DNA of 64,000 bases from Chlorokybus atmophyticus (GCA_009103225.1 RHPI01002823.1:907797-971796), one strand, 5' to 3'; positions 22,560 through 43,169 are shown, numbered from the stretch's first letter. Notes: generated by a model not told the origin, from the letters alone. Translations and numbers: made by a program.

Positions 22560-25173
22560 GCAAGACCCATATGTACAGTTGAAAAGAAGTTGACAGTGCT
22601 TGCTCTACCACAACTTGCGCGTACACCGCACTGCGCTGGGGTTGTCGGGAGCGCGCACCTTGCAGCATTTTTCCCGCACATGCTCACAACACACTTCTGG
22701 GCAAACTGCTCCCGCCCGCACTTGCACATGCGCACCCAGGGTCCAGCAGGATGCGCAACGTGCGGGAGGTACATGCCTATGTTGGTGTTTGCAAGTCTGG
22801 CGTGGTGCTCAGGATGCTGTAAGGCCCACTGCACCAACTCCTGCATCCGCTTCTCCCCCTCTCGCCGCATCGTCTCCTCAAGCTCCCGCATCTCCCGCAG
22901 ACCCCCGCATACATCCTCCGCCCACATGTCCAGACGCTCCCGATGCACTCTCCTCTGCTCTGTCAACACTCTCGTCTGCTCTTCCTGCAATTGCCGCTCC
23001 TCCTCTTGCAAGCCCTGCTTTTTTCGCCTTTGCTGCTCAAGCAGCTTCCGCTGTGCGCCACCCTCCATGGTTTCCCAAACATGCACTCGATGTCGTCCTC
23101 CTCGTAGCCAACCTGCCAATATAGGCGTGTGTCAGAAGGCGCGTGCACACACACTCATATGCATACATGCCATGCATGTGTTTATGTTACTATGAGCAAA
23201 AACGGCTGTTCAATGGCAACTCTCTTGCATGTCTATGTGGGCAGCCATACAGCAGGCATTGCAACACTCTCCACTTATAAGCAACCACACAAAATACACA
23301 AAGTACAGTGCTTACCTCCCCGCAGGTAACGCAGCACCACACAAGGTGTATATTTCTGAGCACCTTGCGCAAGCGGTTTTGAAACAGCTCAACCGCTCTG
23401 TTCTTCACGTTAACATTATGCATTAGAAGTGCCTTGTTGCCGCTCTATGCCTGCATCATGACGCTGCGCGTCTACAATGCCCTGTCGTGTCTTTCAACAG
23501 CCTGCCTGACGCGCACACGCACACACACACACGCACACACACACGAGCGCGCGCATGCACAGTTATGCGTCGCATGTGTGCTGCTGTTGCAATGGTCATC
23601 CAAGGACAATAATCAACACCTCAATGCACAGTGTGCCTTGACCCACGCAAGCTAATGACACGGCTTGAGACAGGCCAAACGCACATGCAATCGTGCTCAC
23701 CTTGCGTCTTCCTCTTTGCGCTCTGCAATGTTGAATGCCTCAGCAAACCGCAGCTCACCGTCCTGCTCGTCCTCCTCATCACCAGTGTCATAGCCACCAA
23801 GATATTCCGCAGTCTCGAATCTCTTTGGATTGTGATTGATCTCATCCGCCCCATCCCACACCTCCGCACTAAGATAGGCTCAACATGCTTGTATGCGCTG
23901 TAAAGTATGTATGAGTAGCCATTGTCGTCATCATCAAAGTAGTTGATGAATCCTTGTCGAGCCTTTCGCTGCAGGCAGATGAACTTGGTGATGTCCGTGC
24001 TTTAGAATATTGCTACTTGTTCAAACCGATAGACTATTGTAAGCGTACTTGCAATTGCACAACGGAAGTATACATAACACACGCAAGTGCACTGCACAGC
24101 CACAAGATAGCATGAATTGTCATTGATGGGTTTGGAAAGGTCGACAGCTTTTATATAGACAACAAGACTTGCGGTCTTTGACAACTAGCATGCGACAATC
24201 GTTGCTAACACAAATAAACATACTAATATTGCTTGCCTCCAAGGAATGGCAGGAACAGTGTTGTTGTTGCAATGGTTGCATTTGTTAAACAATGTGCGAC
24301 AAGAGTGCAAAACACGCTCGTTCCCTCTTGAATCACACGCATGCACCACTACCAAACTCGCAGCTATGTACGCACACAAATATGGCTTGGTGACCTGGCT
24401 GGTCTAAGTAGCATACACGCTTGTATAAGAAGCAACAACGACAACACGTGCATATCCAGTTAGCACAGACCCAAGGCACAGCATGTCAGCAGCCAACATA
24501 TAAACCCTCCCATGCACATACACACACCTGCATCTACTGTGACGTAATGTAGGGGGCAGCATCTGCGCCCATCGCAGGACCGCCGTTCTAGCCCACCTCG
24601 CTTCCGCCGTGCGCTTCGGCAGCGCATGGATGACACGCAGCTCCTCACCTGCCAAGCTGCATTGAATGAGCAGAAAAAACGATAACAACGATGATGGTAA
24701 CAATCGCTAACCGTGTGCTTAGGCAATGCGATTGTTCACATGCGTGTGATGGCATTGGTGTATATGTGTCTGCACATGCACGTAATTGTGTACAATACGC
24801 GTTAACTTCAACTCTGCATCCTTTGGTACAACAGTATTCAATGCTTCAATATGCACAGTTACCACAAAAACCAACTTGCTGAGAGAAAATACTGAAGACA
24901 TAAAGTACGAGTGCTAGATCGTATAAGACAACAAAACAACTGGCTGCTTTGCTGACCCGGAGGAAGGTGGGCCCCGATCGCTCTAAGCAGCTCCGGGGGC
25001 AGCACGGGCACGTCAGCTCTGGGAATATCGCCTTTCGTGTCGATGGAAACGCTGCAGACGCTGCCCTCAACAGCACCGACACTGACACTGACACCGACAC
25101 CGATACCGACACCGACGCCGTCCTCCCCCATACGGCGGCGGAGCTTGTCCCCCGGAAGCCGCATCCAAGGCAT
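22560..25173 (-). CDS. Orphan F-box-like gene, copy A (F-box-like N-terminus, acidic middle, coiled coil, C-terminal Cys cluster); may be intact apart from a terminal frameshift
   Basis: MPWMRLPGDK...DVPVLPPELLRAIGAHLPP|GEELRVIHALPK, AEVWDG...ERKEEDAR, VELFQNRLRKVL...WCCVTCGE, the coiled coil QRKLLEQQRRKK...EKRMQEL, and CKCGREQFAQKCVVSMCGK. Exons are paralogous to copies B and C. Confidence 0.5.
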
Positions 25174-27847
25174 GTAGCATATTGGCAACCAGCACCAAGC
25201 CTGCGACACACTTTGAAAGCAAATTAAACACTTGTTGGTTGGCGCAAAGCCCGTTGGGTGGCAACATCAAGTCATTCGCAGCGACGGCGTGGGTGGCATC
25301 AAGCTTGGAAATTCCAAGGCTTGTAACTTAGCAGACTTAAGAGTTGTAGTCAAGCAGCTTTAAGTGGCAGGTATTTGTCGTAAAAGCTTCGCCACACCTG
25401 CGCAACCATGCAACTGCATTTTTGCATACCAAATCAAGCTAGCAACAGGTAACAACTCAGTTTGAAAGTATGTAATCGTATATACTAAAGGGTTGGCTAG
25501 AGTTCAAATGCAAGCATATGTAAGCTGCTATAGCAAGGGTGGCGTTAACGTACTGACAACCACAACGACGACAACAAAACAACAAGACACGCGGATGATC
25601 TCGACCTACTTGCGTGGCAGCCGCCATGTCAGCATGCATGAAGTGAATACAACCAATGCCAATGCCGTCATGCTTCAGCTTGGGATCGTCAAGTTCATAG
25701 TATCATACCAACCATATCATACCAACTCGCATACCCATAGTATGCGAGGTGGACAGAATATTTTATGATTTATAATTCGCAGCACGTGCAAATGACCAAT
25801 TCATGCCCGTGCTACTGAATCATGCCATCCACCCCAGCTAGAGTTGGTTCGCATACCATCTACCTAGTTTTGCGAACCGGCTCCATAAGCTGCTTCGAAC
25901 ACGTTGCGCGAGCACCAGGGGTGTATTTCAAGCTCCAAGGGGAGAGAGGGAGGGGGGCAATCAAAACATGATGACAGCTCCATGAATGTGCTCTGCAGCG
26001 GTGTGTCACAATTTGTTTTCTGGTCTTTATGGGCGCCGCGTGCTGGAGGGGAACTTCCTCAAAGGTATTGGCAGTAAGTGCGTGACTAGCTCGTGCTTGG
26101 TAAGCATTGCTTAAGGAATAATGCACATGGATTGTTGCATGCCGGGTGATGAGCGAAGGTCTGTTGTCATCATAATACGGGCCAACTTGACAAGGCATTC
26201 TACGCGAGGCAAAATGCACCATGAATGTGGCAAAGGGCGGAGCCCCGATGAAGAGGAAAGGGACTTACCACCAAGAGCGGTAATGTGTTAAGGACTTTTG
26301 TTTTGCAGGCTTAAGACCTGAGCACACCCTATAAGCCTATATTTAACTTGTAGAATGGCTTACTTATCGTTGAGAGTATGACTTATTTTCAGCGCCAATA
26401 GCTACTATGCGTCATAAGATCAAAATGTTGATCGTGGCTAAAGATTTGTATGTTTGTAAACACCTACAGTTGTGCATTGCGTGACTCACTGCATCAATGG
26501 CTGCCGCAGTGACTATGGTAGCGGTTTAAGTAATGCAATTAGAAAGATAGAAACATAGGGCTTGAAACCGTTTCATGTGAAATGCGGCATGTGCACGCTT
26601 TCGTGCTTGCAAAGGCCAATGCTACGGCTGTTGGTGTAGGGGCCGCACAGTAAGGGTAAATCTGCCAAAGTTGGAGCCACATTGCACACGAGCAAGGTAT
26701 TGCATTGTAAGGTAATACATCACTGTGCCCCTGAAAACATGCATGATTAAAAGTCTAAACGTCGTGTAAAGGTATGCACTAAAGCTGATGGGTACACAGG
26801 AGTTGCGAGGGATATTCTCATGCATAACAACAATTGGTATTAATACTGTGCAAATCACGTTGGTGTACACATACCTTGACTTATTGTGTATGCATATCAA
26901 CAACAACCTGCAAGCATGTGCAGTGTGCAATTAAGGCTGTATGCATTGCTTGTTGTCATAAGCACATTAATGTGTTATAAACTAACGACCTCCTCCTTAT
27001 AGGAAACCGATTAGCTTTAAGGTTTGTCTTTACCATGTCATCTCGCTATTTTACATATTAAACACCGCAAAGACCAATATCTTTGCAACAAGGCAGAACG
27101 ATTTACATGTTAAATGAGTAGATCATTAAACATAGATGGGGACTGTAAGCTGATGTTATCAGATGTGCGCTGATATGAGTGAGCAAGATTTGTCACGTAG
27201 ACATCATGTCGGAACACTATTGTGATTACGAGAATAGATCGTAGGTTTAGTCAGTGACTGCATGCCATGCATCGACATCATTTCAAAGGTACTCAGCAGT
27301 GCCATGGCTGTCTAAAACCAAACAGTACAAATACTTGTGTACAAGCACAGCCTTCAAGCAGCTTGGTTCGCTTAGTACAGGGAGAGAAATTGCCTACACA
27401 TATGCCATGCGCAAGCCAACAACCGGAACTCATAACTCAGCAAGACCTATACGTATAGTTCGAAACAAGTCGACAAAATGCTTGCTCTACGTATACCACA
27501 AGTTGTGGCGCGCACACCCCATTGCGTAGGGGTTGTAGAGAGAGCGCTTATTGCAGCAGTCCTTGCACATGCTCGCAATACATTTCTCGGCAGACTGCAA
27601 CCAACACTCGCACGTGAAATGCCAGGATCCAAAAAAGTGCGCAACACGCGTGTTTCGGATTGCATTGCCTCCATGTCTGTTGTTTTACCAAGGGTGCTGT
27701 GAGCGCCACCGATACAACTCCTGCCTCCGCTTTACCATTGCTTAAACGTGCTTCTCCATGTCCTGCCGGTTCTTCACCTTTTGCACTTGATGCTCCCTCC
27801 ACACCTGCAAGCCCTTGCATGGATGCTCTACCCTCACATGCGCGCTC

Positions 27848-29104
27848 TGTCGTGCCTGCCATGGTCGAGGGCAACCTTGTCTCGGACAGGCTGTGGAGGA
27901 GTGCTAGTGCTGCACGCATGCTAGTGTCGTGCATTGCATTGGAGTCATGTAAGCAAAAGACAACCCCCCAATTGTGGGCATAGGCTTGAAGATGAGCCTA
28001 CGCGGTAATCAGTGCAGTGGACGAGCCGATGCCGCTCACCACCTTTGTGTACAGACTGTGTCGTAGTGCACACAGTCAACAAGCCACTACGATAGGTAGT
28101 GCTGTGGACACAGTTCTTTGCATGAGTGGATAGAATGATACACTGTTAAGTGAGGTGAATGAGTGTGCAACACGTGGATACAACACCCTGACTACTGAAA
28201 CAACACACCACCGTCAAGCTCACAGCAATGACAGGCACAGCGCACAAGAGCATGCACCGTGTCTCACGCAGTAAGGGAATTCTTGGCAACCGGGGCAGCG
28301 TGCTTCCAGTTCAAGTCGCTTCACAAGCTCTTTAGAAACAGAGTCTTTACTTCTTAATACTCCTAGTACTCACAGTACTCACTTACAGTGTCACCAGCCA
28401 GTCTGGTGACGTGATTTCCTACTTATACATGTCAAATCATGATTGTGCAGTGCCACGCGGGCATTAGGCTAACGGTCACATCGAGGCCTCATGCTATTTC
28501 GGAAATCTCGTAAGACTCGATATAGCACATGTGTTATTAACAGACTTACAACTGATCAGCTACGCGCGGTCCCTACAGACAGGTCTATAAAGTAGCCCTA
28601 GCTACATGCTACATGAGAGGTACAGTAGCTAGCAGTAGGCTGGGGCTCGCGCGGTCTTCATGCTGGTAGCCCGGGCGTGGGGCTGGGTGTAGGCATGCTC
28701 GAGAAGGACTGGCATGCGAGGGTAGATGGCATGACAGCTGTCGTGCCTGCCATGGTCAAGGGCAACCTTGTCTCGGACAGGCTGTGGAGGAGTGCTAGTG
28801 CTGCACGCATGCTAGTGTCGTGCATTGCATTGGAGTCATGTAAGCAAAAGACAACCCCCCAATCGTGGGCATAGGCTTAATGATGAGCCTACGCGGTGTT
28901 CAGTGCAGTGGACGAGCCGATGCCGCTTGCCACCTTTGTGTACAGACTGTGTCGTAGTGCACACAGTCAACAAGCCACTACGATAGGTAGTGCTGTGGAC
29001 ACAGTTCTTTGCATGAGTGGATAGAATGATACACTGTTAAGTGAGGTGAATGAGTGTGCAACACGTGGATACAACACCCTGACTACTGAAACAACACACC
29101 ACCG
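27848..29104 (-). repeat. 3' terminal repeat array: A(27848-28073)-B(28074-28736)-GC-A(28739-28964)-partial B(28965-29104), then N-gap
   Basis: Direct comparison by eye. The two A copies (226 bp) differ at ~8 positions; B matches the 5' LTR with ~11 differences. Confidence 0.9.
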
Positions 29105-29247
29105 NNNNNNNNNNNNNNNNNNNNNNNNNNNNNNNNNNNNNNNNNNNNNNNNNNNNNNNNNNNNNNNNNNNNNNNNNNNNNNNNNNNNNNNNNNNNNNNN
29201 NNNNNNNNNNNNNNNNNNNNNNNNNNNNNNNNNNNNNNNNNNNNNNN

Positions 29248-30505
29248 CCATGTTGTCCTTCATGCGCTCGCCTCGTTGTCCCAACAGGTCCAGTACCCCT
29301 GTGGGGTGCACCTTCAATACCTTGTAGACAGCACGCCCGACGGAGGTATCGAGGGTGTCGCGTGTAGACGCCATACGGTAGACGAAGTCTCCTGACTCGA
29401 AGCGGCGCTCCCGCTCCTTGTAGAAACCACTGCGCACACGCTCGTAATGCAGCGTGTCGCGTTGCTGCGCGATGCGCAGGTTGTTGAAGGCCATGGGGAC
29501 TGTGTGTTCGAACAGCGCACTGCGCACTGTCAAATCATACAACATCTCGTCGGGGTTGTCGAGATTGTCGACCACTCTGTCGACCTCCTGCTGTGCGTGG
29601 AAAGGGAGCAATGGCTGCCTTCCGAACAGTAGATAATATGGGCTGTACTCTCGCAGGGCTGCCTGCTTGGACAGCCGGTAGCCCATTGCTACCCATGGGA
29701 GGTGATCATCCCAGGTATTCTTCTCGTAGGCGAGGACGTACTTGCGCAGTGCCTTCTTGATGGTCTGCACGGTACGCTCGGCGAGGCCGTCGGCCTGTGG
29801 GTGGTCGCGTGAGGTGCGACGGTGGTCGATGAAGCATCTGTCGATAAGCTTGTCGAAGGCTCCTCTGAACTCCGTACCCTGGTCGGTGATGACTTCAGCG
29901 CAGCTGCCGAAGCGTCCGAGTACATGGGAGAGGAAAGCCTGGGCTACTCCCTCACTGCTCTTGTCGGGCAGGGGCACCAGCTCCACCCACTTGGAGAAGT
30001 GCTCGATCATGACGAGGATGTAGCGGTTGCCTCGCGTTGAGGGCGCTAGGTCTCCGAGGATGTCCAGTCCCCAGCGGTAGAACAACCTGGAAATGGGAAG
30101 GGGATGCAAGGTGGCATTGCGCGTGTTGAGGCTGGCGCGAACCATGTCACACTGCAGACAGTTGCTGACGAACCTCCGCACCTGTCTGTGCACCCCATAC
30201 CACCAGTACTGGGTCCTGACCAGGCTGACCGTGCGCTTGACACTGAAGTGCCCGAGCTCGGTGTGAAGGGAGGAGATGATGCCTTCACGTGCAGCTGGTG
30301 TGGGGACCTCCTGATCTGCATCTTGTATCCATCGATACAGCCTGTCGTTGGCCCAGCGGTAACGATGAGTGCGTTGCCGGACGCGGTCCTTCTCGCGTGC
30401 GCTCATGCCTGCTGGAAGTTGTCCAGTCTGAAGCAGTGCGAGGGATGGCTCGTCCAGCCAGATGTCTTGTCGAGTGTCGGTAGGTGCCAGCTCCTCATCA
30501 TCCAC
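29248..30505 (-). pseudogene. Integrase domain of Gypsy pol; C-terminus lost in the N-gap
   Basis: LHTELGHFSVKRT...YWWYG...CLQC (HHCC), RWGLDILG, WVELVPL, VITDQGTEF, HPQADGLAERTVQTIK (DDE). Confidence 0.93.
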
Positions 30506-30689
30506 CTCAGGGTCGGCAGCGATTGCTTCTTCTGATAAGGATCGGTGGTGGTGATGGCGGGTTCGAGAGCGGGCATGTCCCCGTCTGCTGCTGCCTCAGC
30601 GATCTGAGTCTTTCGTCCTGAGCGTAGCGCAGCGACAGCGAACATGGTGGCCACACCTGAAGGTGCAGCTTTAGGCCCAACTCATGTCG

Positions 30690-32315
30690 GGTGCCTGTGG
30701 CGTCGTTGGTGCTGAGGTGGGGGTTACGGCTGAGGCCATCCGCATCCTGGTTGGCAAGGCCTGCGCGGTGTTCCACCTCGAAGTCGTACTCCTGGAGCAG
30801 CAGCGCCCATCGTGCTTACTTTCCTGTCAGGTGCTGGTTGTTCATTAACCACTTGAGGGGTTGATGGTCAGTGACCAGTTGGAACTGCCGTCCAAACAGG
30901 ATGGGTCGGAAGAAGGAGATGGCCCACACTGCGGCGAGACACTCCCCTTCGTAGCTGCTGTAGTTGGCCTTAGCACTGTTGTTGCTGCGGCTGGCGTACG
31001 ACACTACGCGCTCCTTCTTGTTGTTGTCGTGCTGTACGAGCACGGCCCCCATACCGAGCTTGCTCCAGTCTATGTGCAGGATGAACGACCTGGTGTAGTC
31101 AGGGCGTTGCAGAATGGGAGCTGTGGTGAGGCGGAGCTTCAGCTCCTGAAAAGCCTCCTGTTGTGCCTCCTTCCACAAGAACTCGGTGTCCTTCTTTAGT
31201 AGTTCGTTGAGAGGCCTTGCGATCTTGGCAAAGTCCTTGACAAACCGGCGGTAATAGTTGGCAAGGCCGAGGAAGGCCCGCAGCCGCGTGAGGTCTGTGG
31301 GAGCAGGGATAGCCACCAGTGCCTCCACTTTGGCCTGCTGTACGTACACACCATGGGGCACAATTATGTGTCCTAGGTAGGGTACCTTGTGGGTGAAGAA
31401 GGTGCACTTGTCAGGGTGCACCGTCATCCCGACTTCCTTCAGCCTCTATAGCACCTCTTCGATGTGCTGGAGATGCTCCTCATTGCTGTAACTGAAGATG
31501 AGGATGTCGTCGATGTAGCAGCGTGCGAAGTCCAACCCCTTGAGGGCTTTGTCCATGACGCGCTGAAACTTGGCCGGAGCGTTCTTCAGTCCGAAGGGCA
31601 TGACCTTCCACTGGTAAAGCTGCCGGTTTCCCCAGAAGGAAGTCTTGTGCTTGTCCTCCTCCTTGATGGCGATCTGGTTGTACCCTTGGCGCATATCCAG
31701 GATACTAAAGACCGTGCAGTCTCCTACATCGTCAAAGATGCCTTCTGCGGTAGGCATTTGATACCTGTCCTGCTTGGTCTAGTTGTTGAGGGGGCGATAG
31801 TCGCCACACATGCGCCGGTCTGTCTAGTTGCCTGCTGAATCTTTCTTCAGGGGCATGACGGTCGCGGCCGCAAAGTCCGATGTGGACTCCTCGATCAGGC
31901 CTGCATCTAGCAGCGCCTTGCACCTCTGTTCCACCAAGTCTTCTTCTAGCTTGGAGAGGCGGTACTGTCTTCTGAACACCGGTTCGGTGTCCACTAGTTC
32001 AATGTCCATCTGGTATGCTGAGCAGATGCCCAGCTCCTTCACACTGAAGCTGAATTGGCTCCTCCACTTGTTGAGGAGAGCCTTGAGTTGCTCTCGAGTT
32101 TGGCCTGTGGCCAGCGGTTCAATGGCGTGGGACCACGAGGTAGCGTTGGCGACCACTGGAATGTCTTCCACAGTGACTGCTGCCTGCTCCTCCATATGGG
32201 CGGTCTTGAGGGCGATGTGTGCTGCTTTGGTCTTTGAAAAGCGAGCAATCCACCCCCCACCCAGGTGTTCGAGCTCCTGGAAGGACACATGGCGGTCCTG
32301 GAGAGCAAAGCACAT
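30690..32315 (-). pseudogene. Reverse transcriptase and RNase H of Gypsy pol, with in-frame stops
   Basis: RMCGDYRPLN, LDMRQGYNQI, MPFGLKNAPAKFQRVM, YIDD (31506-31517), KVPYLGH, LRAFLGLANYYRRFVKDFAKIARPL, YASR...YEGECLA, VTDHQPL and DADGLSR. Stops at 31824, 31779, 31446 and 30816. Confidence 0.95.
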
Positions 32316-32329
32316 TTACAAGTACCACA

Positions 32330-33270
32330 CCATGCTGTTTTGATCCATGGCGCGCACTAACAACTGACACTGTTGACTGGTTGTCAGCGTGGAGCCTGTG
32401 ATGCTGCCTGGAAAGAATCCCATAGCACGCTCGCGCTCACGGGCATTGGGTTCTTCCAGCTGTCCAGTGTTGGAGTCTAACACCATGCCGTCGCCTCCAT
32501 TGCGGAACGCGTAGGAGCCTGGATAGGATACAAGTGTGGGTAGTGCGCGGCGCGGCTGACCAGGCTGGTTGCACTTGTAGAAGTGGTGGCGGTCAAGGCG
32601 TGTGACCGGTTGCGCTGTGCGTCCAGGGTCCAGGATGTCATCGACGACGAGATTTCGTGGCCGATTGCTGTATAGGTATTCTGCAAACAGGTTCTCCACA
32701 ATGGCCAGGTTGGTCCACTTGGCGCGGACGCGATGTGCGCGAGATCCATGACGCGCGGCGTTGCTTTTGAGAGGATGCCCTAGCAAAGAGCATACTTGTT
32801 GATAGGCCTTGGCGACGTGATGCCGCTTGTCATCCTCGGAGTGCACATTCTTGATGATGTACCCCAAGGGCCTAGCAATCTGACTGGTCTGCAGGAGTTT
32901 GATGACTCTCATTAGCTCCCAGATTAGCTGTGAGCGAGGATCAGAGAGCCCGTGGCCTCTGCCTGCCCTGGAGTGCCCTTGACACTCCCATCCTGCTATC
33001 AGCAGGTCAATGTTGCCGACTGCCTGCAGGTGATCCTTGGTAATCCAGCGGATGTCCTGCGGCAGAGCCTTCTGGCTCCCTTGCAGTGCCGACAGCGGTA
33101 GCTGCTGCGGGTAGCGCTGGTGCAGCTGTCGTAAATGATGGCTCAGAGCCTCCTGTGCATGAGGGTCAGGGTCACAGTAGAGGTACTTGGTGACTGTTGT
33201 TCCTGTGTTAAGAACAGCCGCAAGCCCACTGCCTATGCCTCCAAACAGCTCCAGCACGGTGATGCCTTGT
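32330..33270 (-). pseudogene. C5 cytosine DNA methyltransferase domain (DNMT3/DRM-like) in frame within pol
   Basis: Motif I VLELFGGIG (33231-33245 FGGIG), motif IV DLLIAGWECQGHS (Cys 32982-32984), motif VI YIIKNV (ENV-derived), motif VIII AHRVRAKWTN, motif IX ERERAMGF and motif X QLLVRAMD, all in canonical order. Confidence 0.9.
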
Positions 33271-33699
33271 TGTCGGCGGAACATGTGGAACTCCACAACT
33301 CCAGTAGCTATGTGGTACTGCTCCTGCACTGTAGCCTGGTCTTTGTAGACAAGGAAGTGTGCAGTGAGCTGAGGCCTGGTCAGTAGCATGTGTGCTGCTA
33401 CTTGTGCGCTCCAGCGACGCTCGGATGGCTCCTGAAAGGCCACTTCTTTGGTGTCAGTCTCCTGAGACTCATCGTACGGTGTAGGAGAGTCTTCTTCAGC
33501 GTTTAGGCTCGAGCTTGAGCTCGTTGCAGTTGTTCTCGGCTGCGTTCGGGCACAAGGCACACGTGAGCTTTTTGTAGGACTGTAGGTGGCTGCTGCGGCC
33601 GACCTTCGTTGCGAGCGGGCCTTGTCCACCAGTTTGAGAGGTAGGAATCCCTGCTCCTCTCCATCATCCTCATCCCAATGCGGTCGAAACCATGCCTGC

Positions 33700-34060
33700 T
33701 CAGTCCAGCAGTCCATCCCCATGCCGACAGGGAAGTTGCAGTCCTGTCCCAGCAGTAGGTCAAAGGACCCGGCATCGGTGACCACACACCTTTGTACAAT
33801 CTCGGTGCTGTGGGAAGGGTTTAGTCCGGTGAGGCGGATGCTCACAACCTGCTTGGTAAGGCCGAGCACCTTGTCGCAGTTGCCGGTTGCGGTGTCCAGC
33901 TGGTAGGGACAGGGCAGCAGCTCAGCGCTGGTGATGCCGAGATCTCGTGCGAGGTAGCGCCCAATAATGACAGGCTGTGCTCCAGTGTCCAGCATCACGC
34001 GTTTGGGTGCCCGCCCATTGACGGTCACGTGCTTGCCTTGGTTGGCGATCATGGCTGCAT
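33700..34060 (-). pseudogene. Retroviral-type aspartic protease domain
   Basis: RVMLDTGAQPVIIG (DTG at 33981-33989) and downstream FDLLLGQD. Confidence 0.88.
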
Positions 34061-34505
34061 TGGCGTTGATGCGCAGCCTCTTGAAGCGACGGAACCTCTT
34101 GCGTGGAGAGACTGTTGCTTCACTCTCATCTGCGGGGCCTGACCGTAGGGCAGCCAGGGCTCCTCTGCCTGATGGATCTTGTGGACCTCCTTGTCCTCGG
34201 TTTTGTCGAAACCGTCCTTGTCGCGGTTGCTGGTACACGCGTGGTGGCCTAGGCACTGGAGGTGCTGCTGCAACCTGTCCAAGTGGAGGTGCAGGAGGGT
34301 TGACCCTCTGTGCAGCTGTTGTCATGCCAGGAGGAGTGGCCAGTGGCTGTGGCGGGAACCCTGGAGGACCTGGTGTTTGCGGGACTGCCTCTCGTGCAGC
34401 CTGCTCCTCTGCATAGGTCCATCGCACAGCATGGGCTGCCTCTCTGACTAGTGTACCTTCCCATGTAGCCGTCGCATTGTTGTTCACGTCTATATAGCGA
34501 TGGTT

Positions 34506-37500
34506 CTAAGGCATGGGCTGCAGGTACACTGCGCGTAGAAGCCGCGCTCTCGTGTCGTGGGTGATGGTGGGCACCCTGAGGATCCCTGCCATGTAAGCAT
34601 CCCATCTGCCGTTGATCACTCCCACTTCCAGCACTGTTATTGCTCGTGCGCGTACAGTGAGGCGGGTCTCTGGCTGTTGGACATGCTGCTCGTAAGCAGC
34701 GGCGATGCGCCTGCGCTGACGTCCTGCCTCCACTCCTGGCAAACTCAGTATAGCCTCCAGAGCTCCCTCCAGAGTGTCAGTGGCGGCGGAAGCCACTTCA
34801 TCATAGGCTTGCCGTATGGAGCGAAGGAATGCGTCCACCCACGCTATTCTGGCGCCGAAAGCGAACAACGGGACTGCGGGATGGTTGGTGACCAGCCACG
34901 TCACTAACCGTGCGCGTGCCGCGTTGCCATTGTCTCGCATCCCAAGCATCTGCCGAAGTCCAATGCCTTCTTGCCGATGCAGCATGGTTGCTTGTCGCAA
35001 CAGAGCAGTGCGTAGTTGTTGCTCTCCAACCAGTCCTGCTCCATCTCTTTGTGTACACCCTTGTGGTGTAAGGTAGCCCCTCCCTGGCTCCCTTTGGTCC
35101 TCAGGTAGATCCTCCACCAGCGCAGGCAGCAACGGGGCGATCACCCCCCTGGTTTGTTGAGCCAACGCCCTCGCTTGGTCAGAGTTGGTCTCGACGAAGA
35201 GCGGAGTGGTGCTGGAGGATGGACCAGCAGCTGGTGACTGCGGTACTGGTGCACGCGTAGCTTCAAGAGCTTGTTCACGTGCAGCAATGGCGGCAGCTTG
35301 ATCCTGTCGCCAATGATATGCTTGTTCCAGTGCGTGGTAGCGCTGATGAAGGCGAGCGGTTGTAGGAAGTCCGAGTGCTTCATCAGTGCCCAAAGGCAGG
35401 TCGGCTGCGTCGGCGATGCGCTGCTGGACGGTGTCTCGGCGGTCCCGATACGTGTCCAGCGGGCTGGGTTCAAAGGTGGTGGTTGGCATGCGTGCAGACC
35501 GGTGCGGGGCGGTCTGCATGTTGTTGTGCAGCGCCCAGAACAGCTGCAGGGCCAACTCCAACACTACCGGTGGGCTGTAGCTGATCAAAAACACCCTGTC
35601 ACGCTTCGGAGGTGCAGTGCCAGCAAGGATCTCATCTTCCAATTGGTGTTGAGTAAGTGCTGGAAGGGTGTGAACCTCTGGTAGCGGGAAGACGCGATCA
35701 TCGCGGGCGACATGCGTGGTGCGCTCCCCCCCCGACCGAAGGCGATGGTAGTGGGGTCTGCTCCGCGCAGGATGGTTTCCCATGCTCGCTCAGCTTGCTG
35801 ACCAGTTGGGACAGCCTGAGTGACGTCGAGAGCGGGCAGAGTGGCTGCGCGCGTCGCTGCAGAGACAGCGGGCTCGACGATGGCCATTGTGGCAGTTGCG
35901 ACGGTATCGGTCGGTGGTGCGAGAGTTGTCTCAACGCCTACGGACAGAGGCACTGCTGCAGTGGGAAGTGCACCGCCCACTGGTGCAGATTCGGTAGAGA
36001 TGGCGGCTGTTGCCATTGTGCTCACCAGTGTCGGCGTCCCGGTGTCCATCGGTGTACCAGGTTGTGGTGCAACTGGAGTGGGTGCTGCTGACGTTGGTGG
36101 AGTCGACGTTGTAGCCGGTGTGGCTGTTGCTGCGGAGGCAGCACCACTGGTGGCTTCGGAGGAGGTGCCTGCTGATGTTGTTGCAGCTTCCCCTCGTGCT
36201 CCTCGTGATGGTTGCACGCGGGACGGAGTGTTCCTGTCTCTCTCGCGTTTTGCAGCCATCAGCGCCCATCGGGCAGCGTAGCAGGCGCGGTAGTCCTGCT
36301 CCTTGTCTTCCTCCATGCATGCCATACGCGCCATGAGGGCTGCCATATGGTCATCAGCTGGTGGGTTGGCTGAAGCCTTGGTGGCAACAGCAGCAGCGCG
36401 CGGACGTGTCTCTGGTCCCTTACGCTGAGGAGGTCTGTTCTTCCCCCTGTAGCCTTGCTCTTCCTTGCGAACACTGGCGTCGTTGTTGTTGTTACTGCCA
36501 TCAGCGTTGTTGCTGTTGTGGGCTCCAGTGTTGTCGCTATTGTAGCCACTGAAGTGGTTGCCAGTGTGGCCTCCAGTGTTGTTGCTGTTGTAGCCACTGA
36601 AGTTGTTGCCAGTGTGGCCTCCAGTGTTGTTGCTGTTGTAGCCACTGAAGTTGTGGTTGTAGCTGTTGCCAGTGTGGCCTCCAGTGTTGTTGCTGTTGTA
36701 GCCACTGAAGTTGTTGCCAGTGTGGCCTCCAGTGTTGTTGCTGTTGTAGCCACCGGAGTAGTTGTGGTTGTAGCTGTGGGCGGGCCTCAACTCTGGGAAC
36801 TTGAGCCAGCAGACTGACTCCAAATGACCAGTCCTATGACAGTGGTCGCAAACCAAAGTTGAGTATTCTTCGGTGCACTCCTTTTCGTAGTGCCCATGCC
36901 GTCCACAGCGATGACACAGCACAGGGGCAGCAAGTGCAGCATGAGCTGACCGTTTCCCTTTGTCGCGTGCTGGTGGAGCGTCCCGCCCACGGTCGCGGCG
37001 AGGAGGCTCAGTTGTCGTGCTAACTATAGGCCGTGCGGCGCTGCGGTTGGTGTCCAGCACTGCCTTCTCATACACCAAGCGCTTGTGGATGGCTTGTGCA
37101 GTCTCGAAGGCTTCTTTGAGGGTGTAACCAAGGGGCCTGCTGTAGTTCAGAGTCAGGCGTGTCGACTCGCTCAGAGCAGCATCCAACTCATTGACGTATA
37201 TCACTGCAGCAGCCTCCTCACTGACAATCTTGTAGTCAGTGTCCTTCAGCAGACCTTCCAGTCTGGAGTACAAGCGGAGGGGATCCTCATTGGGCTTGCG
37301 TCGGAAGCGTCTCAGCTCCTCAACCTTGCTGGTGGTCTGAGGAGGGAAGGTACGGCGCAGGGCAGCGTACAGGTCCTTGAGTGGAGAATCACAGATGGCA
37401 GCACCTACGGTGATGGCTGGTGCGCGCAGTGCTGCTGACCCGAGGGTGAAAGCACTGCCTCCTGCACGAGAGCCAGGTGTTGCTAGAGGTAGAGGAGTAC

Positions 37501-38192
37501 CCAACTCTGCGGCTGCCGCTTGTTGTGCAGCTCTTTGTTCCTCAATGATGATGGCAGAACGGTCAAGGATGCGGACTCGACGTGTGGCCTCCTTGGACTC
37601 AACTTCTGCAGGGGTCAAGTTGACAAGTACCAACTCTGGTTCCTCCTCCTCTGCCTGCTTGAGAGCTGCAGCTATGGACAAGCCTGTTACTGCAACTGAA
37701 GTGGCAGGTGGAACGACACCTGCTGGACGGTGCAGAGATGCAGATGCTATGGTGCTGGCAAGCTCGTCATAGCCGTCTACTCGACGCAGTTCAGCAACGG
37801 ACATCGTGTGCTTCATGATCAAGATAATGAGCAGCAATGTGGAAAGAGATCTCATCTGACCAGTCTTTGTTCTTCAGAGCTTGCTGCCGCATCTTGGAGT
37901 GGAACTTGATGATGAACTCATCCAGCGAGGTGGTGCCGGCACGTCCGGAGAAGCGCAGGGATGTGGTTGAACTGGAAGACTCCATCTCGTTGTCGTCGCT
38001 GTCCGATGATAGTGGAGAAGCTTGATGACGAGGAGTAGAGTGGAGCGGGGTGAAGCTGGAGATGGAGCGCGAGCCTCTGCTGCTGCGGTCGATGCTCCCG
38101 TCACTGGTCCGCTCGTAGGTGAGGTTGGTGGTTGGGCTCCAACTGCTGAGGTCACCCTCGTCTATTGGGGAGAACGGGGTGGGCCTGCTCAT
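34506..38192 (-). pseudogene. gag and long gag-pol linker, frameshifted near 37800 and ~35725
   Basis: LRRFRRKPNEDPLRLYSRL (gag-like) and two zinc knuckles, CHRCGRHGHYEKEC and CDHCHRTGHLESVC. The 34506-35783 ORF is in frame with pol across a single TAG. Confidence 0.8.
36520..36775 (-). repeat. 48-bp coding tandem repeat in gag (about 5 copies, GYNSNNTGGHTGNNFS)
   Basis: Repeat unit tgtagccactgaagttgttgccagtgtggcctccagtgttgttgctgt seen directly. Confidence 0.9.
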
Positions 38193-38389: not shown

Positions 38390-39056
38390 TGTAAGTCAAC
38401 AAGCCACTACGATAGGTAGTGCTGTGGACACGGTTCTTTGCATAAGTGGATAGAATGATACACTGTTAAGTGAGGTGAATGAGTGTGCAACACGTGGATA
38501 CAACACCCTGACTACTGAAACAACACACCACCGTCAAGCTCACAGCAATGACAGGCACAGCGCACAAGATCATGCACCGTGTCTCACGCAGTAAGGGAAT
38601 TCTTGGCAACCGGGGCAGCGTGCTTCCAGTTCAAGTCGCTTCACAAGCTCTTTAGAAACAGAGTCTTTACTTCTTAGTACTCCTAGTACTCACAGTACTC
38701 ACTTACAGTGTCACCAGCCAGTCTGGTGACGTGATTTCCTACTTATACATGTCAAATCATGACTGTGCAGTGCCACACGGGCACTAGGCCAACGGTCACA
38801 TCGAGGCCTCATGCTATTTCAGAAATCTCCTAAGACTCGATATAGCACATGTGTTATTAACAGACTTACAACTGATCAGCTACGCGCGGTCCCTACAGAC
38901 AGGTCTATAAAGTAGCCCTAGCTACATGCTACATGAGAGGTACAGTAGCTAGCAGTAGGCTGGGGCTCGAGCGGTCTTCATGCTGGTAGCCCGGGCGTGG
39001 GGCTGGGTGTAGGCATGCTCGAGAAGGACTGGCATGCGAGGGTAGATGGCATGACA
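38390..39056 (-). repeat. 5' LTR (667 bp, TGTCA...TTACA) with TATAAG at 38742-38747
   Basis: Matches 28074-28736, has canonical TG..CA ends on the - strand, and lies upstream of gag. Confidence 0.92.
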
Positions 39057-42000
39057 GCTCTCCCGACGCACTCTACTATGCTCTTCTTGCATGTGCTGCT
39101 TTTTTCGCCACTTCTGATTGAACAGTTTCCACTTGTTCGCCGTCCTCCATGAATTTTGAAACATGCACTCGCTGTTACCTCGTAATGGCCAATTTGCACC
39201 AGGTATATGCAAGCATGTTTGATTGTGTCAGAAGGCATTCAACAGGCATGGGAAGCCCCCCGATGACCTCCTATAGTAACGTGCAAGCGCACACACATAC
39301 ACGGCGTGCATGTTTGTGCTTGTGTATGTATACACAGCAGCAGTTGTTTATGGGCAATTCTGTTGCATGTCTGTGTCACATCAACAAAGCATGCACTCTC
39401 CACTTATCTGCAACCACAAGAAGTGCGTTGCTTACCTCCCCGCACGTAGCGCAGCACCACACGAAGTCCAAGTCCTTGAGCAACTTGCGCAAGCAATTGT
39501 GGAACAGCTCAACCGCTGTGTTCTCCACGTCAATATCATGCTTCATCAGCGTCATGTGCCGTTCTAAAGCTGCATCCATGATGCTGCGAGCCTACAATAT
39601 CTTGTCGTGCTTGGCAACAGCCTGCCTGCGCCATACACACACGTGCACATGCACACGCTCTTAGGTGACGTCACAAAGCACACCCGCTTGTCACGACAAA
39701 GCACTCTTAGAACTGGCAGGCAGTTGCGTATGTACTGCTGTTGCATGGCAATTAAAGACACTGTACCAACACCTCAAGGCAAAGCGTGTCTTGACTCATG
39801 CGAGGCAAGGCAAGGCCTGTGCTCTCCTTGCATCATCCTCTTTGCGCTCTGCGTCATCCCATGCTCTAGCATACCGCTGAAATTCCCCCTCGTCATCATC
39901 GATATCATAGCCCCCATTGTTCGGAACCGCGAATCCCTTTGGCTTGCGAACCAACTCACCCACCCCACCCCACACCTCCGCAGTGAAGTACTTTTGCAAA
40001 AGGCTTGACATAGACGTCTAGGTCCGTTGTCGTCTTCATGAAGCCAATATATGTTTGTGTAAGCCCGCGCTCCAGGCGAATTACATTTATGATGTCGATA
40101 CCTTTTTGAGTATAGAACTATCGCAGACACTCACATTACATCTATTGCTACTTGCTAGGAGTTAGACTGATGTAACTGTCTGTGCAATACAACAATACAG
40201 ATGACTAGCCCCGCATGCGATTGCAATCCCTATCACAAAACGGCATGAATACATAATGGCAAGCAGAAACAGGACTTGCGCTATTGGAAAACCTACATTC
40301 AATTTTCCACTAGTACAACCAAACACTGGAGTAGCTTTGGACTATTGTGCATGAGTGCAAACACGCCCCTCCCCTTGAATAGACGTATGCAGTTGCACAC
40401 ACACGCACCACAACAACACTCGCAGACAAGTACCACGCACACCAATGTGGCTTGTTGCTCACTGACATGCCTGATTGAATAAGCGTGCACACTTGCCTTT
40501 AAACAACCACCACAATGCAACTGCCCCGGTAAGCATACACATAAGGCACAAGTCAGCAGCTAACGCCACAAGCAAAGCAAGGGGCTCTCACACGTACACA
40601 CTCACACTCACATGCGCTTGTGCGCGTGCGTTGATACACCTGCATCGGCTTAGATATCCTGTTTGGGCAGCACCTGCGCCCACTGCAGGGCTGCCGTCTC
40701 AGCCCATCCCGCCTCCGCCACATGCTTCGGCAATGCGTGGATCTAACGCAGCACCTCACCTACCCCATCATTGAATGAGCAACACTCACAACGCCGAACA
40801 ACGATAATCATTTCAATTGCTTGACTGACAGTGCTGCTTGGGCAATGTGCTTGTTTATGCCTACATTGGCGTGTATGTGCTTGCGCTTACACACCCACAT
40901 CCTTACTTGTACAATACGCGTGAACTCTGCAATGCCGTGGGTAAAGCAACTATAAATGCTTGCTGCACAAGTTGCTGTGCACAGTCATGACAAAATAAAA
41001 TCTATCGAAAAAGTCATCAAGAACATACAAGAATACGAGTGTTGGTTGCTATAAGAAAACCAAAAAAACAAAACAACTGGTGTTGCTCACCTAGGGGCAA
41101 ATGGGCGCCGATCGCTCTAAGTACCTCAGGCGGCAACATCGGCACGTCGACACGGGTGACTTCGCTAACGACGACGATGCTGATGTCGGTGACGCTGTCC
41201 TCATTACCACCAGTGCCGCTGCCGTTATCCCCCACGCGGCGGCGGTGCCCGTTCCCCAACAGCCGCATCCAGGGCATTAAGCATGTTGGCAACAAGCTTG
41301 AAGCTTGTTACACCTTGAAAGCAAACATTGTTGGCCGGCGTTAAGCCCGTTGAGGCCTCGGGTGGCACGCGTGGGTGTAGCTCTCTCTCTTGAGGACAAT
41401 GCTAAGAGCACTGTGCTCAGAGCATTGTGCTCTGAGCAGCCCATTATCCGATTGCATTTTGCTAGAATAGCGTTGGCCTGTCCACGCACTGTCCAAGCCT
41501 GCCTGACGTTGTATGATGCTGGTGTGTTGTACTTTTATGTTGGTAGGGTCGGGAACTGTTTGCCACGTATGTTTTTGAAATATTGGTGTTTAAGAGTGTT
41601 CAAGTAGACCCAAGTTGGCCCAACACACCACAACCGCCAGTTGGCACTCTCACAACAACATTTACTCAATCGCCCGGGTAACTTTAACCTTCAAACTTCC
41701 AAAACTTGTGAGTGCGATTGCACTTGTGATGATACATATAATAGCCCAAGCAAACTCAAGAAATTGCAGTAAAGCAGCTCAGAGCGGGGCCAGCATCTGC
41801 TTGCATTTGACCGCCAGATGCAAGCAGAGGCGGCGAACATCCGTCTCATAGATTGTGCCACACATGCATAACCATACGAATGCATTTGCGCAACTGATCC
41901 AGCCAGCAAGTAAGCACAAATAACATATGTCACAACTTGGTACGTATACATCGGTGGGCTGATTCAAGGTTTGATGTAATCTGTACTTTAAGTGCATGCA

Positions 42001-43169
42001 GCGGCGGCATGAGCGGCATTGATTAACTGATGAACACAACACAACCCTCCATTGCGCAATGAGACATGTAGATGATGACAACGGACAACCTGCGTGGCAA
42101 CCGCTGCGTCAGCATTCATCAAGTGAGTACTACTGTAGTACATGCAATGCCTTGGTCATTGCGCTTGCCAGCCAATATGTCTTGGTCAAGTGGTGGCTAG
42201 GATTATCATTTCCACCATACCGGCTCGCATGACATGCGAGCTAGAGTGGACATTATGATTCGGTCAATACGTGCAACTGGTCAACTCGTGCGCGTGCTGG
42301 ATCATACCACCCACCCCCAGCTCAGACATTGGCCACTTAGCTGTACGAAACAGCACCAGTCAAGATGCGAACGAGACATTGCACAAGCATCAAGAGGATG
42401 TGAATAAGCTCAAGCAAGACTGGGGGAGGGGGGCAATTTAGGCATGATGTTGGCTGCGTCAAGAGCATGACGTCACGGCTGGTATCCTTTATTGCTGCTT
42501 AGAGTTACGGAAGAAGATGTTAGCGTTGCGGTGCGCAACCCCAAGTTGGCACTCGATAAGCGTTACTTGAGGAACTTCCTATTGAGATTTTATGTTCTGT
42601 TGACCTGCTACTTCGCAAGCTTATTATGCAATTAAACCCCACATGCCTATAATCTTTACTTTATTTGTCGGAAGGCATCTGCATCTTACAAAATATGATT
42701 TGGCGTTATACGTCGTAAGTTCGATCCATTACAGAGTGTGGCTGAAGATTTAAGAACCCTGTAAAGATTGATTCTTCGCAACAAGGCATATTAACATACA
42801 TACTAATTAGGTGGATTGTTTATAATGTTTGGGATTCTTGAGCTGATTTTTCATGGAGTGTAGTAATGCTGACAAGAGTGAGCAAGATCTGTTAAGTACA
42901 CGTCGGGTTTTGGGAAACTGTGGTCTGAAAGAGAATTGAGGTTTGGTCAATAACTGCTTACACCCCCTCTAACGGTATTCGGAGTGCCATTGCTATCTGA
43001 GGAAACCAAAGAAGGCGAACACTTCTTTACAAGCTTAGCTTTCAAGCAGCTTTGTTTGCCTAGTAAAGGGAGAGCAATCCCCAAACAAATGCCACATGCA
43101 AGATGGCCGGCCATCGCAACTCATAATAAAAACAGATCTATATGTAAATTATAAACAAGTTTACAATAA

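What the first reader, a model, noticed from the sequence alone, without database searches (positions are those of the whole stretch)
32330..33270. Cytosine DNA methyltransferase domain embedded in the pol polyprotein of a Ty3/Gypsy LTR retrotransposon
Seen: between the protease (DTG, 33981-33989) and RT (YIDD, 31506-31517), and in frame with both, lie ~310 codons carrying C5-MTase motifs I, IV, VI, VIII, IX and X in order. The AHRxRxxWxN, ERxxGF and LLGR-like motifs resemble DNMT3/DRM. Established: ordinary Gypsy pol is PR-RT-RH-IN; retrotransposon capture of DNMTs has been reported in dinoflagellates and charophyte algae. Inference: this family encodes its own methyltransferase, probably released by the protease and packaged with RT. 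It might methylate nascent cDNA or the insertion site (epigenetic camouflage), or reshape host methylation. Whether this family, this PR-DNMT-RT position or this host is already described is unknown to me.
Basis: partly seen in the sequence, partly recalled or inferred. Interest (0 to 1): 0.92.

Follow-up and report, generated by a model that had tools for sequence, protein, structure and literature searches.

The report
Gypsy retrotransposon with own DNA methyltransferase
This is a real but dead copy of a green-algal Gypsy retrotransposon that carries a DNMT3-like cytosine DNA methyltransferase between its protease and reverse transcriptase, a kind of element first described in 2018 in the alga Klebsormidium.

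Summary
On the minus strand lies an ~11 kb Ty3/Gypsy element with 666-bp repeats that are 98.3% alike. Its pol frame reads protease, C5 DNA methyltransferase, RT, RNase H, integrase.

The methyltransferase is genuine: Pfam PF00145 passes its cut-off, the AlphaFold model has pLDDT 93, and the 50 best PDB fold matches are all DNMT3A/B/C. A family profile scores DNMT3A (2e-24) above DRM (8e-15) and M.HhaI (4e-10).

This copy cannot code. It has six in-frame stops, a frame change before the integrase, K in place of the catalytic E of motif ENV, and V in place of the motif X glycine.

The family itself is multi-copy in public runs, and listed differences in the domain are mostly synonymous (13 of 18).

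The kind is already published: KnitGypsy-Dnmt3 (de Mendoza 2018), cited in 2026 as "streptophytes (Gypsy-DNMT3)". I found no paper on it in this host. Earlier scan notes name the host Chlorokybus; I did not verify that.

The scan has already noted this family on other DNA of this genome.

Relatives fall into two pol layouts. One subgroup has a TMV-type leaky-stop context after the DNMT.

Verdict: new member of a known kind.

The parts
38394..39059 (-). 5' long terminal repeat (in the element's sense orientation), 666 bp
   Evidence: 98.3% identical to 28074-28739, 11 differences
35588..37873 (-). gag-like ORF. It has a capsid-like part, two CX2CX4HX4C knuckles and a low-complexity tail with 48-nt tandem repeats (36454-36813).
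   Evidence: zf-CCHC E 0.0056, below Pfam's cut-off. Residues 155-365 align to the gag parts of relatives. Repeats.
34509..35789 (-). 427-codon open frame of unknown nature between gag and protease. It lies in the pol frame and overlaps the gag end by about 200 nt in the -1 frame.
   Evidence: No Pfam hit, no match in any relative, no usable Atlas hit
34506..34508 (-). In-frame TAG before the protease ORF
   Evidence: Not among the 40 listed differences in public contigs, with 367 rows hidden.
33741..34028 (-). Aspartic protease domain (DTG at 33981-33989)
   Evidence: PF13650 E 1.3e-8, PF13975 E 3.9e-7
32319..33290 (-). DNMT3-like C5 cytosine DNA methyltransferase domain, motifs I, IV, VI, VIII, IX, X in the unpermuted order. 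In this copy motif VI is KNV and motif X has V for the conserved G.
32316..32318 (-). In-frame TAA 9 codons after motif X. It interrupts a helix that all 13 aligned relatives read through.
31827..32315 (-). Linker and N-terminal part of RT, same frame
   Evidence: Aligns to the pre-RT region of relatives
31779..31826 (-). Short stretch bounded by two in-frame TAG stops (31824-31826, 31779-31781)
   Evidence: All or nearly all public contigs read another letter at 31825 and 31781.
31449..31778 (-). Reverse transcriptase core (YIDD at 31506-31517)
   Evidence: RVT_1 E 4.2e-22
31446..31448 (-). In-frame TAG inside RT
   Evidence: Contigs read another letter at 31448.
30819..31445 (-). RT thumb and RNase H
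   Evidence: RT_RNaseH_2 E 1.3e-33, RT_RNaseH E 7.5e-30
30816..30818 (-). In-frame TAA inside RNase H
   Evidence: Contigs read another letter at 30817.
29248..30595 (-). Integrase (H2C2 zinc finger and DDE core) in another frame than RT/RH. It runs into the N gap.
   Evidence: PF17921 E 1.7e-14, rve E 1.5e-8; frame change. Contigs carry extra single letters after 30536 and 30675.
29105..29247 (.). Assembly gap (143 N) at the integrase C-terminus. A PHD finger, if the element has one, would lie here.
   Evidence: PHD follows the integrase in many relatives.
27847..29104 (-). 3' repeat block. It holds the 666-bp repeat (28074-28739) flanked on both sides by copies of a 227-bp piece (27847-28073 and 28738-28964), then the first 140 bp of the repeat again (28965-29104).
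   Evidence: Self-BLAST at 97.8-98.6%. The layout resembles the A...B-A-B order printed for KnitGypsy-Dnmt3.

Best explanation
The locus is a decayed insertion of a multi-copy Ty3/Gypsy family whose polyprotein natively carries a DNMT3-type, unpermuted C5 cytosine methyltransferase between protease and RT (identity: about 0.95). It is the same kind of element as KnitGypsy-Dnmt3 of Klebsormidium, here in another green alga. This copy makes no enzyme, because of stops, a frame change and the loss of the ENV glutamate.

For intact family members, the most likely mechanism (about 0.4, inferred) is as follows. The DNMT is translated as part of Gag-PR-DNMT(-RT-RH-IN), cut out by the element's protease, and carried with the reverse-transcription or pre-integration complex. 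There it methylates the element's own new cDNA or fresh insertion de novo. The copy then enters chromatin already carrying the host's own mark rather than being recognised as foreign.
For: Shown here:
- Domain identity and fold.
- DNMT3 is the best solved relative by family profile: 89 bits, against 58 for DRM, 42 for M.HhaI and 30 for DNMT2.
- The motif order is unpermuted.
- The window is collinear with intact relatives P0038 and P0248.
- The family is large: 237 clusters at 50% identity with E < 1e-30. C123, Q124, R207 and R209 are invariant, and E167, N168 and G332 nearly so.
- The window falls in a supported clade (97) made only of PR-DNMT-RT types and unclassified fragments.
- The family is multi-copy in the host: 448 contigs in one public run and 186 in another match at 85% or more.
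- Of the 18 listed differences in the domain, 13 are synonymous.
- Four of the six stops are read otherwise in all or nearly all contigs.
- The stop after the DNMT falls in a column where 13 relatives have a residue.

From print:
- Ka/Ks < 0.2 for the Klebsormidium DNMTs.
- Retrotransposon DNMT3s of Symbiodinium methylate CG de novo in yeast.
- The self-methylation hypothesis itself (PMC5890265).
Against: - No activity has been shown for any Gypsy-borne DNMT. The Klebsormidium domain gave no methylation in yeast, which the authors called inconclusive.
- Half the family, including this copy, has E instead of P before the catalytic cysteine (WECQ against WPCQ). The effect of that is unknown.
- Cleavage by the protease, packaging and the substrate are pure inference.
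- Only 40 of 407 differences were shown to me, so the synonymous excess is a crude sample.
- I could not tell whether KNV is private to this copy.
- I did not confirm the host's name or its methylome.
Confidence: 0.7

Rival explanations
1. The element's DNMT acts on host chromatin rather than on its own cDNA. Brought to the target site with the integrase (which in many relatives ends in a PHD histone reader), it would write CG methylation around the insertion or more widely. That could mimic gene-body methylation or reshape silencing.
For: Many relatives pair the DNMT with an integrase PHD finger in one polyprotein. In Klebsormidium, CG methylation marks active gene bodies while CHG/CHH marks silent transposons.
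Against: No data on the enzyme's sequence context or its targets. In this window the integrase end is lost in an assembly gap, so no PHD finger is seen. The nearest long relative, P0248, shows none in the precomputed Pfam list.
Confidence: 0.25
2. The domain is kept for a role other than DNA cytosine methylation, such as nucleic-acid binding, oligomerisation, or methylation of RNA or RNA-DNA hybrids.
For: The Klebsormidium Gypsy DNMT gave no DNA methylation in yeast. Half the family has lost the motif IV proline. The 2018 paper notes weak conservation of motif X in the Klebsormidium members.
Against: The catalytic cysteine, the ENV glutamate and the RxR arginines are invariant or nearly so across 30 diverse members, which is hard to explain without catalysis. 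Human DNMT3B failed in the same yeast assay.
Confidence: 0.15
3. The TAA right after the DNMT (32316-32318, followed at once by ATG) is a programmed ORF boundary. Protease and DNMT would then be made with Gag, and RT-RH-IN only by readthrough or re-initiation.
For: Several relatives do end ORF1 after the DNMT. L001, L007 and L008 have an in-frame TAG followed by CAA, L005 an in-frame TGA, and L003 a -1 overlap. The stop is not among the listed differences from public contigs.
Against: The window's stop lies about 100 codons upstream of the conserved site used by those relatives, and it lacks their context. It interrupts a helix that all 13 aligned relatives read through. The closest relatives, P0003 and P0248, are fused there. 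The copy has five other stops, four of them not shared by other copies.
Confidence: 0.12
4. The DNMT is a copy-specific secondary insertion or an assembly chimera, not part of the family.
For: The element borders an assembly gap and an odd tandem repeat.
Against: Single alignments of about 850 residues run from the DNMT through RNase H against two independent intact relatives. About 30 relatives show the same order. Public contigs cover the whole stretch, although no single listed piece spans it.
Confidence: 0.02

Closest known systems
KnitGypsy-Dnmt3 of Klebsormidium nitens (de Mendoza et al. 2018, PMC5890265)
   Same: Both are intronless, unpermuted, Dnmt3-related DNMTs inside the pol ORF of a Ty3/Gypsy element in a streptophyte alga. 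Both are multi-copy with signs of purifying selection on the domain. Both have an unusual repeat layout with extra repeat copies at the 3' end.
   Different: The host appears to be different: no hit above 49% identity appeared in three protein searches, and no Klebsormidium protein appeared at all. I could not read the printed domain order (it is in a figure only) or obtain the Klebsormidium sequences. It is therefore untested whether this is the same lineage or only the same kind.
Metagenomic and algal PR-DNMT-RT-RH-IN polyproteins (P0248, P0003, P0038; Closterium sp. NIES-68 P0007)
   Same: Same domain order. DNMT identity is 39-49%. They are collinear through RT/RH and share a DNMT clade with support 97.
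   Different: Those are open reading frames; the window copy is broken. The window has about 650 extra codons between the gag knuckles and the protease, with no counterpart in them.
Chlorophycean RT-RH-DNMT-IN-PHD elements (Haematococcus lacustris, Monoraphidium neglectum, Chromochloris zofingiensis entries; P0228, P0236, P0101)
   Same: Related DNMT domain (about 40% identity, same motif signature) inside a Gypsy pol.
   Different: The DNMT sits between RNase H and the integrase, not between protease and RT. On the DNMT tree the two layouts are separated by one branch.
Mammalian DNMT3A/3B/3C catalytic domains
   Same: These are the best solved relatives by profile (E 2e-24) and by fold (TM about 0.8). 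The motifs match, including AHRxRxxWxN and ERxxGF, and the motif order is unpermuted.
   Different: About 19-20% identity. There are no PWWP or ADD reader domains. WECQ or WPCQ replaces SPCN in motif IV. The domain is part of a retrotransposon polyprotein.
SymbioDIRS-Dnmt3 of Symbiodinium (same 2018 paper)
   Same: A Dnmt3-type domain in a retrotransposon Pol. It is the only group with shown de novo CG methylation.
   Different: It sits on a DIRS (tyrosine recombinase) backbone in a dinoflagellate host, and the authors judged it an independent capture.

Membership tests
C5 cytosine DNA methyltransferase (Pfam PF00145) | Profile match above the curated cut-off | tested here: met
   34.7 bits against a cut-off of 22, E 1.8e-8, on a partial stretch. 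The family profile hits DNMT3A at 2e-24.
C5 cytosine DNA methyltransferase (Pfam PF00145) | Methyltransferase fold with target-recognition lobe | tested here: met
   pLDDT 93.1. The 50 best PDB matches are all DNMT3 catalytic domains, E 6e-15.
C5 cytosine DNA methyltransferase (Pfam PF00145) | Motif I FxGxG (SAM binding) and the motif IV catalytic cysteine | tested here: met
   ELFGGIGSG and GWECQ are present. The cysteine is invariant in 30 members. The proline before it is E here and in about half the family.
C5 cytosine DNA methyltransferase (Pfam PF00145) | Motif VI ENV glutamate | tested here: not met
   This copy reads KNV (32844-32858). In the alignment every relative that covers the motif has E, and E is at least 90% conserved among 30 members. 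The family meets the feature; this copy does not.
C5 cytosine DNA methyltransferase (Pfam PF00145) | Motif VIII RxR and motif IX/X signature | tested here: met
   AHRVRAKW and ERERAMGF are present. Motif X has V for the nearly invariant G.
Dnmt3 clade of eukaryotic DNMTs | Closer to Dnmt3 than to DRM, Dnmt1, Dnmt2 or bacterial enzymes | tested here: met
   Profile bits: DNMT3A 89, DRM 58, M.HhaI 42, DNMT2 30, and no DNMT1 hit at E <= 0.01. The fold ranking agrees.
Dnmt3 clade of eukaryotic DNMTs | Unpermuted motif order (DRM has VI-X before I-V) | tested here: met
   The order I, IV, VI, VIII, IX, X runs along the frame.
Dnmt3 clade of eukaryotic DNMTs | Placement inside the Dnmt3 clade in a tree with reference DNMT families | not tested
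   No reference DNMT sequences could be brought in as tool results. The 2018 paper reports this placement for the Klebsormidium elements only.
Ty3/Gypsy LTR retrotransposon | gag with zinc knuckle, and pol order PR-RT-RH-IN | tested here: met
   Pfam hits are in that order on one strand. The zf-CCHC hit is weak (E 0.0056), but two CX2CX4HX4C motifs are visible.
Ty3/Gypsy LTR retrotransposon | Paired direct terminal repeats with a target-site duplication | tested here: inconclusive
   666-bp repeats at 98.3% identity. No matching 4-6 bp lie outside 28074 and 39059. An extra tandem repeat block and an N gap at the 3' end obscure the true end.
KnitGypsy-Dnmt3 | Dnmt3-related domain inside the Gypsy pol ORF, intronless | tested here: met
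KnitGypsy-Dnmt3 | Repeat layout A - coding - B-A-B | tested here: inconclusive
   The 3' block 27847-29104 shows alternating copies of two pieces. The gap at 29105-29247 hides the junction with the coding part.
KnitGypsy-Dnmt3 | Sequence kinship with the Klebsormidium copies (DNMT and RT trees) | not tested
   No Klebsormidium protein surfaced. The paper's text and the supplements held give no sequences or domain order.
KnitGypsy-Dnmt3 | Purifying selection on the DNMT among copies (published Ka/Ks < 0.2) | tested here: met
   A crude test only: 13 synonymous and 5 non-synonymous among the 18 listed differences in the domain. 367 rows were not shown.

The most novel reading that the evidence does not exclude
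Gypsy elements with a DNMT3-type enzyme may not be a Klebsormidium oddity. They may form one old, very large green-lineage group with two pol layouts.
- PR-DNMT-RT-RH-IN: this window and Closterium.
- RT-RH-DNMT-IN-PHD: Haematococcus, Monoraphidium and Chromochloris.

That would mean the module either moved within pol or was captured twice.

In one PR-DNMT-RT subgroup the DNMT lies upstream of a conserved TMV-type leaky stop (UAG-CAR-YYA). The enzyme would then be made with Gag and protease in large excess over RT and integrase. Neither point appears in the papers I could search.
Probability: 0.45. Interest if true: 0.6.

Novelty: new member of a known kind. Interest (0 to 1): 0.38.

Why it matters
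Cytosine methylation is the host's main weapon against transposons, so a transposon that carries its own de novo methyltransferase inverts the usual picture.

The case itself has been known since 2018. This locus adds another host, apparently an early-branching streptophyte alga.

Through its relatives it also suggests that such elements are far more widespread and varied in green algae than the single published Gypsy example implies.

No Gypsy-borne DNMT has yet been shown to be active. A host with many young copies would therefore be a useful second system in which to test whether these enzymes methylate the element's own cDNA.

This particular copy is dead and has no function of its own.

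Tried and rejected
1. Finding the Klebsormidium sequences for a direct comparison. Three word-indexed protein searches, the exhaustive representative search and a cluster look-up returned no Klebsormidium entry. The paper's text and the supplements held give no sequences or domain order.

2. Naming the host. Run names are coded. The window's own proteins are not in the protein collection, where the best hit is 49% identical. The only host-gene clue is a violaxanthin de-epoxidase lipocalin exon, which points to a photosynthetic green-lineage genome. 'Chlorokybus' comes from earlier scan notes and is untested by me.

3. Deciding whether the stops at 32316-32318 and 34506-34508 and the K of KNV are private to this copy. 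This is unresolved.

4. The 427-codon frame between gag and protease gave no Pfam hit, no relative and no Atlas hit. It may not be a real protein.

5. Target-site duplication under a simple LTR-LTR model: none seen.

6. CpG depletion as a sign of methylation-driven decay. The observed/expected ratio is 0.69 in the element and 0.67-0.84 in the flanks, which is not distinctive.

7. Other copies in the window: none.

Full report
**What is there**

The minus strand of 27.8-39.1 kb holds one LTR-type retroelement.
- Two 666-bp direct repeats (28074-28739 and 38394-39059) are 98.3% identical, with 11 differences.
- Between them, Pfam finds an aspartic protease, PF00145 DNA_methylase, RVT_1, RT_RNaseH/RT_RNaseH_2, and the integrase zinc finger and core, in that order on that strand. 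A weak zinc knuckle lies in the upstream gag-like ORF.
The methyltransferase motifs lie between them in the same frame.
- The window holds no second copy.

**Is the methyltransferase real?**

Yes.
- PF00145 passes its cut-off (34.7 against 22 bits), although only on a 65-residue stretch.
- Against solved structures, the single sequence finds DNMT3A/3C/3B first, at E about 1e-5.
- A profile of 30 family members (alignment A1) finds DNMT3A at 2e-24 (89 bits), plant DRM at 8e-15, M.HhaI at 4e-10 and DNMT2 at 1e-6. DNMT1 does not appear at E <= 0.01.
- An AlphaFold model on that alignment has mean pLDDT 93.1 and pTM 0.92.
- Its 50 best Foldseek matches in the PDB are all DNMT3A, 3B or 3C catalytic domains (E from 6e-15, TM about 0.8 by target, about 20% identity).
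- The motif order is I, IV, VI, VIII, IX, X, unpermuted as in Dnmt3 and unlike DRM.

**Is it native to the element?**

Yes.
- The window aligns to two independent open polyproteins (P0038, P0248) in single stretches of about 850 residues, from the DNMT through RNase H, at 45-48% identity. The protease lies before this stretch and the integrase after it.
- The exhaustive search found 1822 representatives at E <= 0.001 and 237 at E <= 1e-30. Many are polyproteins of 1,500-3,400 residues.

**State of this copy**

Read in the pol frame, the copy has the following defects.
- In-frame stops at 34506-34508, 32316-32318, 31824-31826, 31779-31781, 31446-31448 and 30816-30818.
- An integrase in a different frame.
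- Motif VI reads KNV. In the alignment every relative that covers the motif has E, and among 30 members E is at least 90% conserved.
- Motif X has V where G is nearly invariant.
- The E before the catalytic cysteine (WECQ) is not decay, because about half of the family has it.

Contigs of three public runs were laid on 30500-35800.
- 448 contigs in one run and 186 in another match at 85% or more, spread over all identity classes. This shows a multi-copy family of mixed ages.
- At four of the six stops (30817, 31448, 31781, 31825) all or nearly all contigs read another letter, so those stops are not shared by the other copies in these runs.
- The contigs also carry single extra letters after 30536 and 30675, where the window changes frame.
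- The other two stops and the K codon are not among the 40 differences shown. 367 rows were hidden, so they stay open.
- The TAA after the DNMT falls in a column where all 13 aligned relatives have a residue, and the conserved helix continues across it. I read it as a nonsense change, at about 0.85.

**Selection**

Of the 18 listed differences inside the domain, 13 are synonymous and 5 are not; all 13 synonymous ones are at third codon positions. Neutral change would give roughly one quarter synonymous. This is a crude sample, but it agrees with the Ka/Ks < 0.2 published for the Klebsormidium elements.

**Relatives**

The best protein hits are only 39-49% identical and come mostly from metagenomes. 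Named ones include Closterium sp. NIES-68 (gag-PR-DNMT) and Haematococcus lacustris.

- About 165 read RT-RH-DNMT-IN-PHD. These include Haematococcus, Monoraphidium and Chromochloris entries.
- About 30 read PR-DNMT-RT-RH-IN, some with PHD.
- The sample is biased by my choice of queries.

On a FastTree of 226 DNMT domains the two layouts are separated by a single change. The window lies in a clade (support 97) of 21 PR-DNMT-RT proteins and 20 unclassified fragments, with none of the other layout.

**ORF boundary in relatives**

In nine places with the PR-DNMT-RT order that I read as DNA or protein, the junction between DNMT and RT took three forms.
- Fused: P0038, P0003 and the first copy on L006.
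- In-frame stop: L001, L005, L007 and L008.
- -1 frame: L003 and L004.

The stop codons and the letters after them are:
- L001: TAG-CAA-TCA
- L007: TAG-CAA-CTA
- L008: TAG-CAA-TCC
- L004: TAG-CAG-TTA, read in the RT frame

All four lie 21-31 codons before the same conserved RT N-terminal motif. From my own knowledge, UAG-CAR-YYA is the tobacco mosaic virus type of leaky-stop context. If it works here, that subgroup makes Gag-PR-DNMT in excess over RT-RH-IN. The window does not have this site, and its closest relatives are fused there.

**Comparison with what is known**

- De Mendoza et al. 2018 (PMC5890265) described KnitGypsy-Dnmt3. These are Dnmt3-related, intronless, unpermuted DNMTs inside the pol ORF of a Gypsy element of Klebsormidium nitens, under purifying selection, with a DIRS-like A-coding-B-A-B repeat layout.
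- The isolated domain gave no methylation in yeast. The authors called this inconclusive, because human DNMT3B also failed. Two Symbiodinium DIRS DNMT3s did methylate CG de novo.
- They proposed that such enzymes methylate the retrotranscribed cDNA.
- A 2025 paper and a 2026 preprint cite the case as known in streptophytes.
- I found no paper that links Chlorokybus with such elements and no other paper using these names.

The kind is therefore known, and this host appears to be new. Whether the window's family is the same lineage as the Klebsormidium one could not be tested, because no Klebsormidium sequence reached me.

**Host**

- The window has 51% G+C, two N gaps and an exon of a violaxanthin de-epoxidase lipocalin domain, so it comes from a photosynthetic green-lineage genome.
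- Earlier follow-ups of this scan call the genome Chlorokybus. I could not check that.
- The same notes show that the scan has already met this element family on other pieces of this genome, including two followed-up findings on its repeat layout and on the integrase PHD finger.

**Mechanism**

Shown:
- The family keeps every catalytic residue of a C5 methyltransferase over great divergence.
- It keeps the domain in frame with the other pol enzymes.
- It is multi-copy here.

Inferred:
- The domain is released by the element's protease, travels with the cDNA, and methylates it or the new insertion de novo (about 0.4).
- Rival roles are methylation of host chromatin at the target (about 0.25) and a role other than DNA methylation (about 0.15).

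**Limits I kept to**

I do not say which letters the other copies carry at the broken places.

**Verdict**

This is a dead copy of a known kind of element in a new host. The wider points on two pol layouts and a leaky stop in relatives are leads, not results.

Noticed in passing
relatives P0035, P0037, P0042, P0058, P0228, P0236, P0101 against P0038, P0248, P0007: The same DNMT clan occurs in two pol layouts. RT-RH-DNMT-IN-PHD includes named Haematococcus, Monoraphidium and Chromochloris entries. PR-DNMT-RT-RH-IN includes this window and Closterium. One branch separates them on the DNMT tree.
   Followed up: partly
L001:6000-6008, L007:4553-4561, L008:4807-4815, L004 about 4700-4714: In four metagenomic relatives the ORF that ends with the DNMT stops at TAG followed by CAA or CAG and a YY(A/C) codon. 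The stop lies 21-31 codons before the conserved RT N-terminus and in frame with it. This resembles the TMV-type leaky-stop context.
   Followed up: partly
window 34509-35789 (-): A 427-codon open frame between gag and protease, in the -1 frame relative to the gag end. It has no Pfam hit, no counterpart in any relative and no Atlas hit. With the gag tail it adds about 650 codons that relatives lack.
   Followed up: partly
window 36454-36813: Tandem repeats of 48 nt (with 12- and 24-nt offsets) in the gag tail. They encode runs of the type N-N-T-G-G-H-T-G-N.
   Followed up: no
window 27847-29247: The 3' end of the element holds alternating copies of a 227-bp piece and the 666-bp repeat, followed by a 143-N gap. 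No target-site duplication appears under a simple two-LTR model. Another finding of the scan deals with this.
   Followed up: partly
window 51810-52808 (-): An open frame with a violaxanthin de-epoxidase lipocalin domain (PF07137, E 5.7e-13). It is a host gene exon typical of photosynthetic eukaryotes.
   Followed up: no
window 22668-25043 against 39416-45761: Several stretches on either side of the element are 72-79% alike at a near-constant offset of about 16.1 kb. One piece occurs a third time at 45645-45761. This is either another repeat family or an old duplication that the element sits in.
   Followed up: no
L006:1-14317: One metagenome contig carries two elements of this kind in tandem. 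The first has a single open frame of 2,300 residues (PR-DNMT-RT-RH-IN-PHD). The second is split after the DNMT into two frames.
   Followed up: no
window 32979-32993 and relatives: About half of the family, including this copy, has WECQ instead of WPCQ in motif IV. The proline that precedes the catalytic cysteine in most C5 methyltransferases is replaced by glutamate.
   Followed up: no
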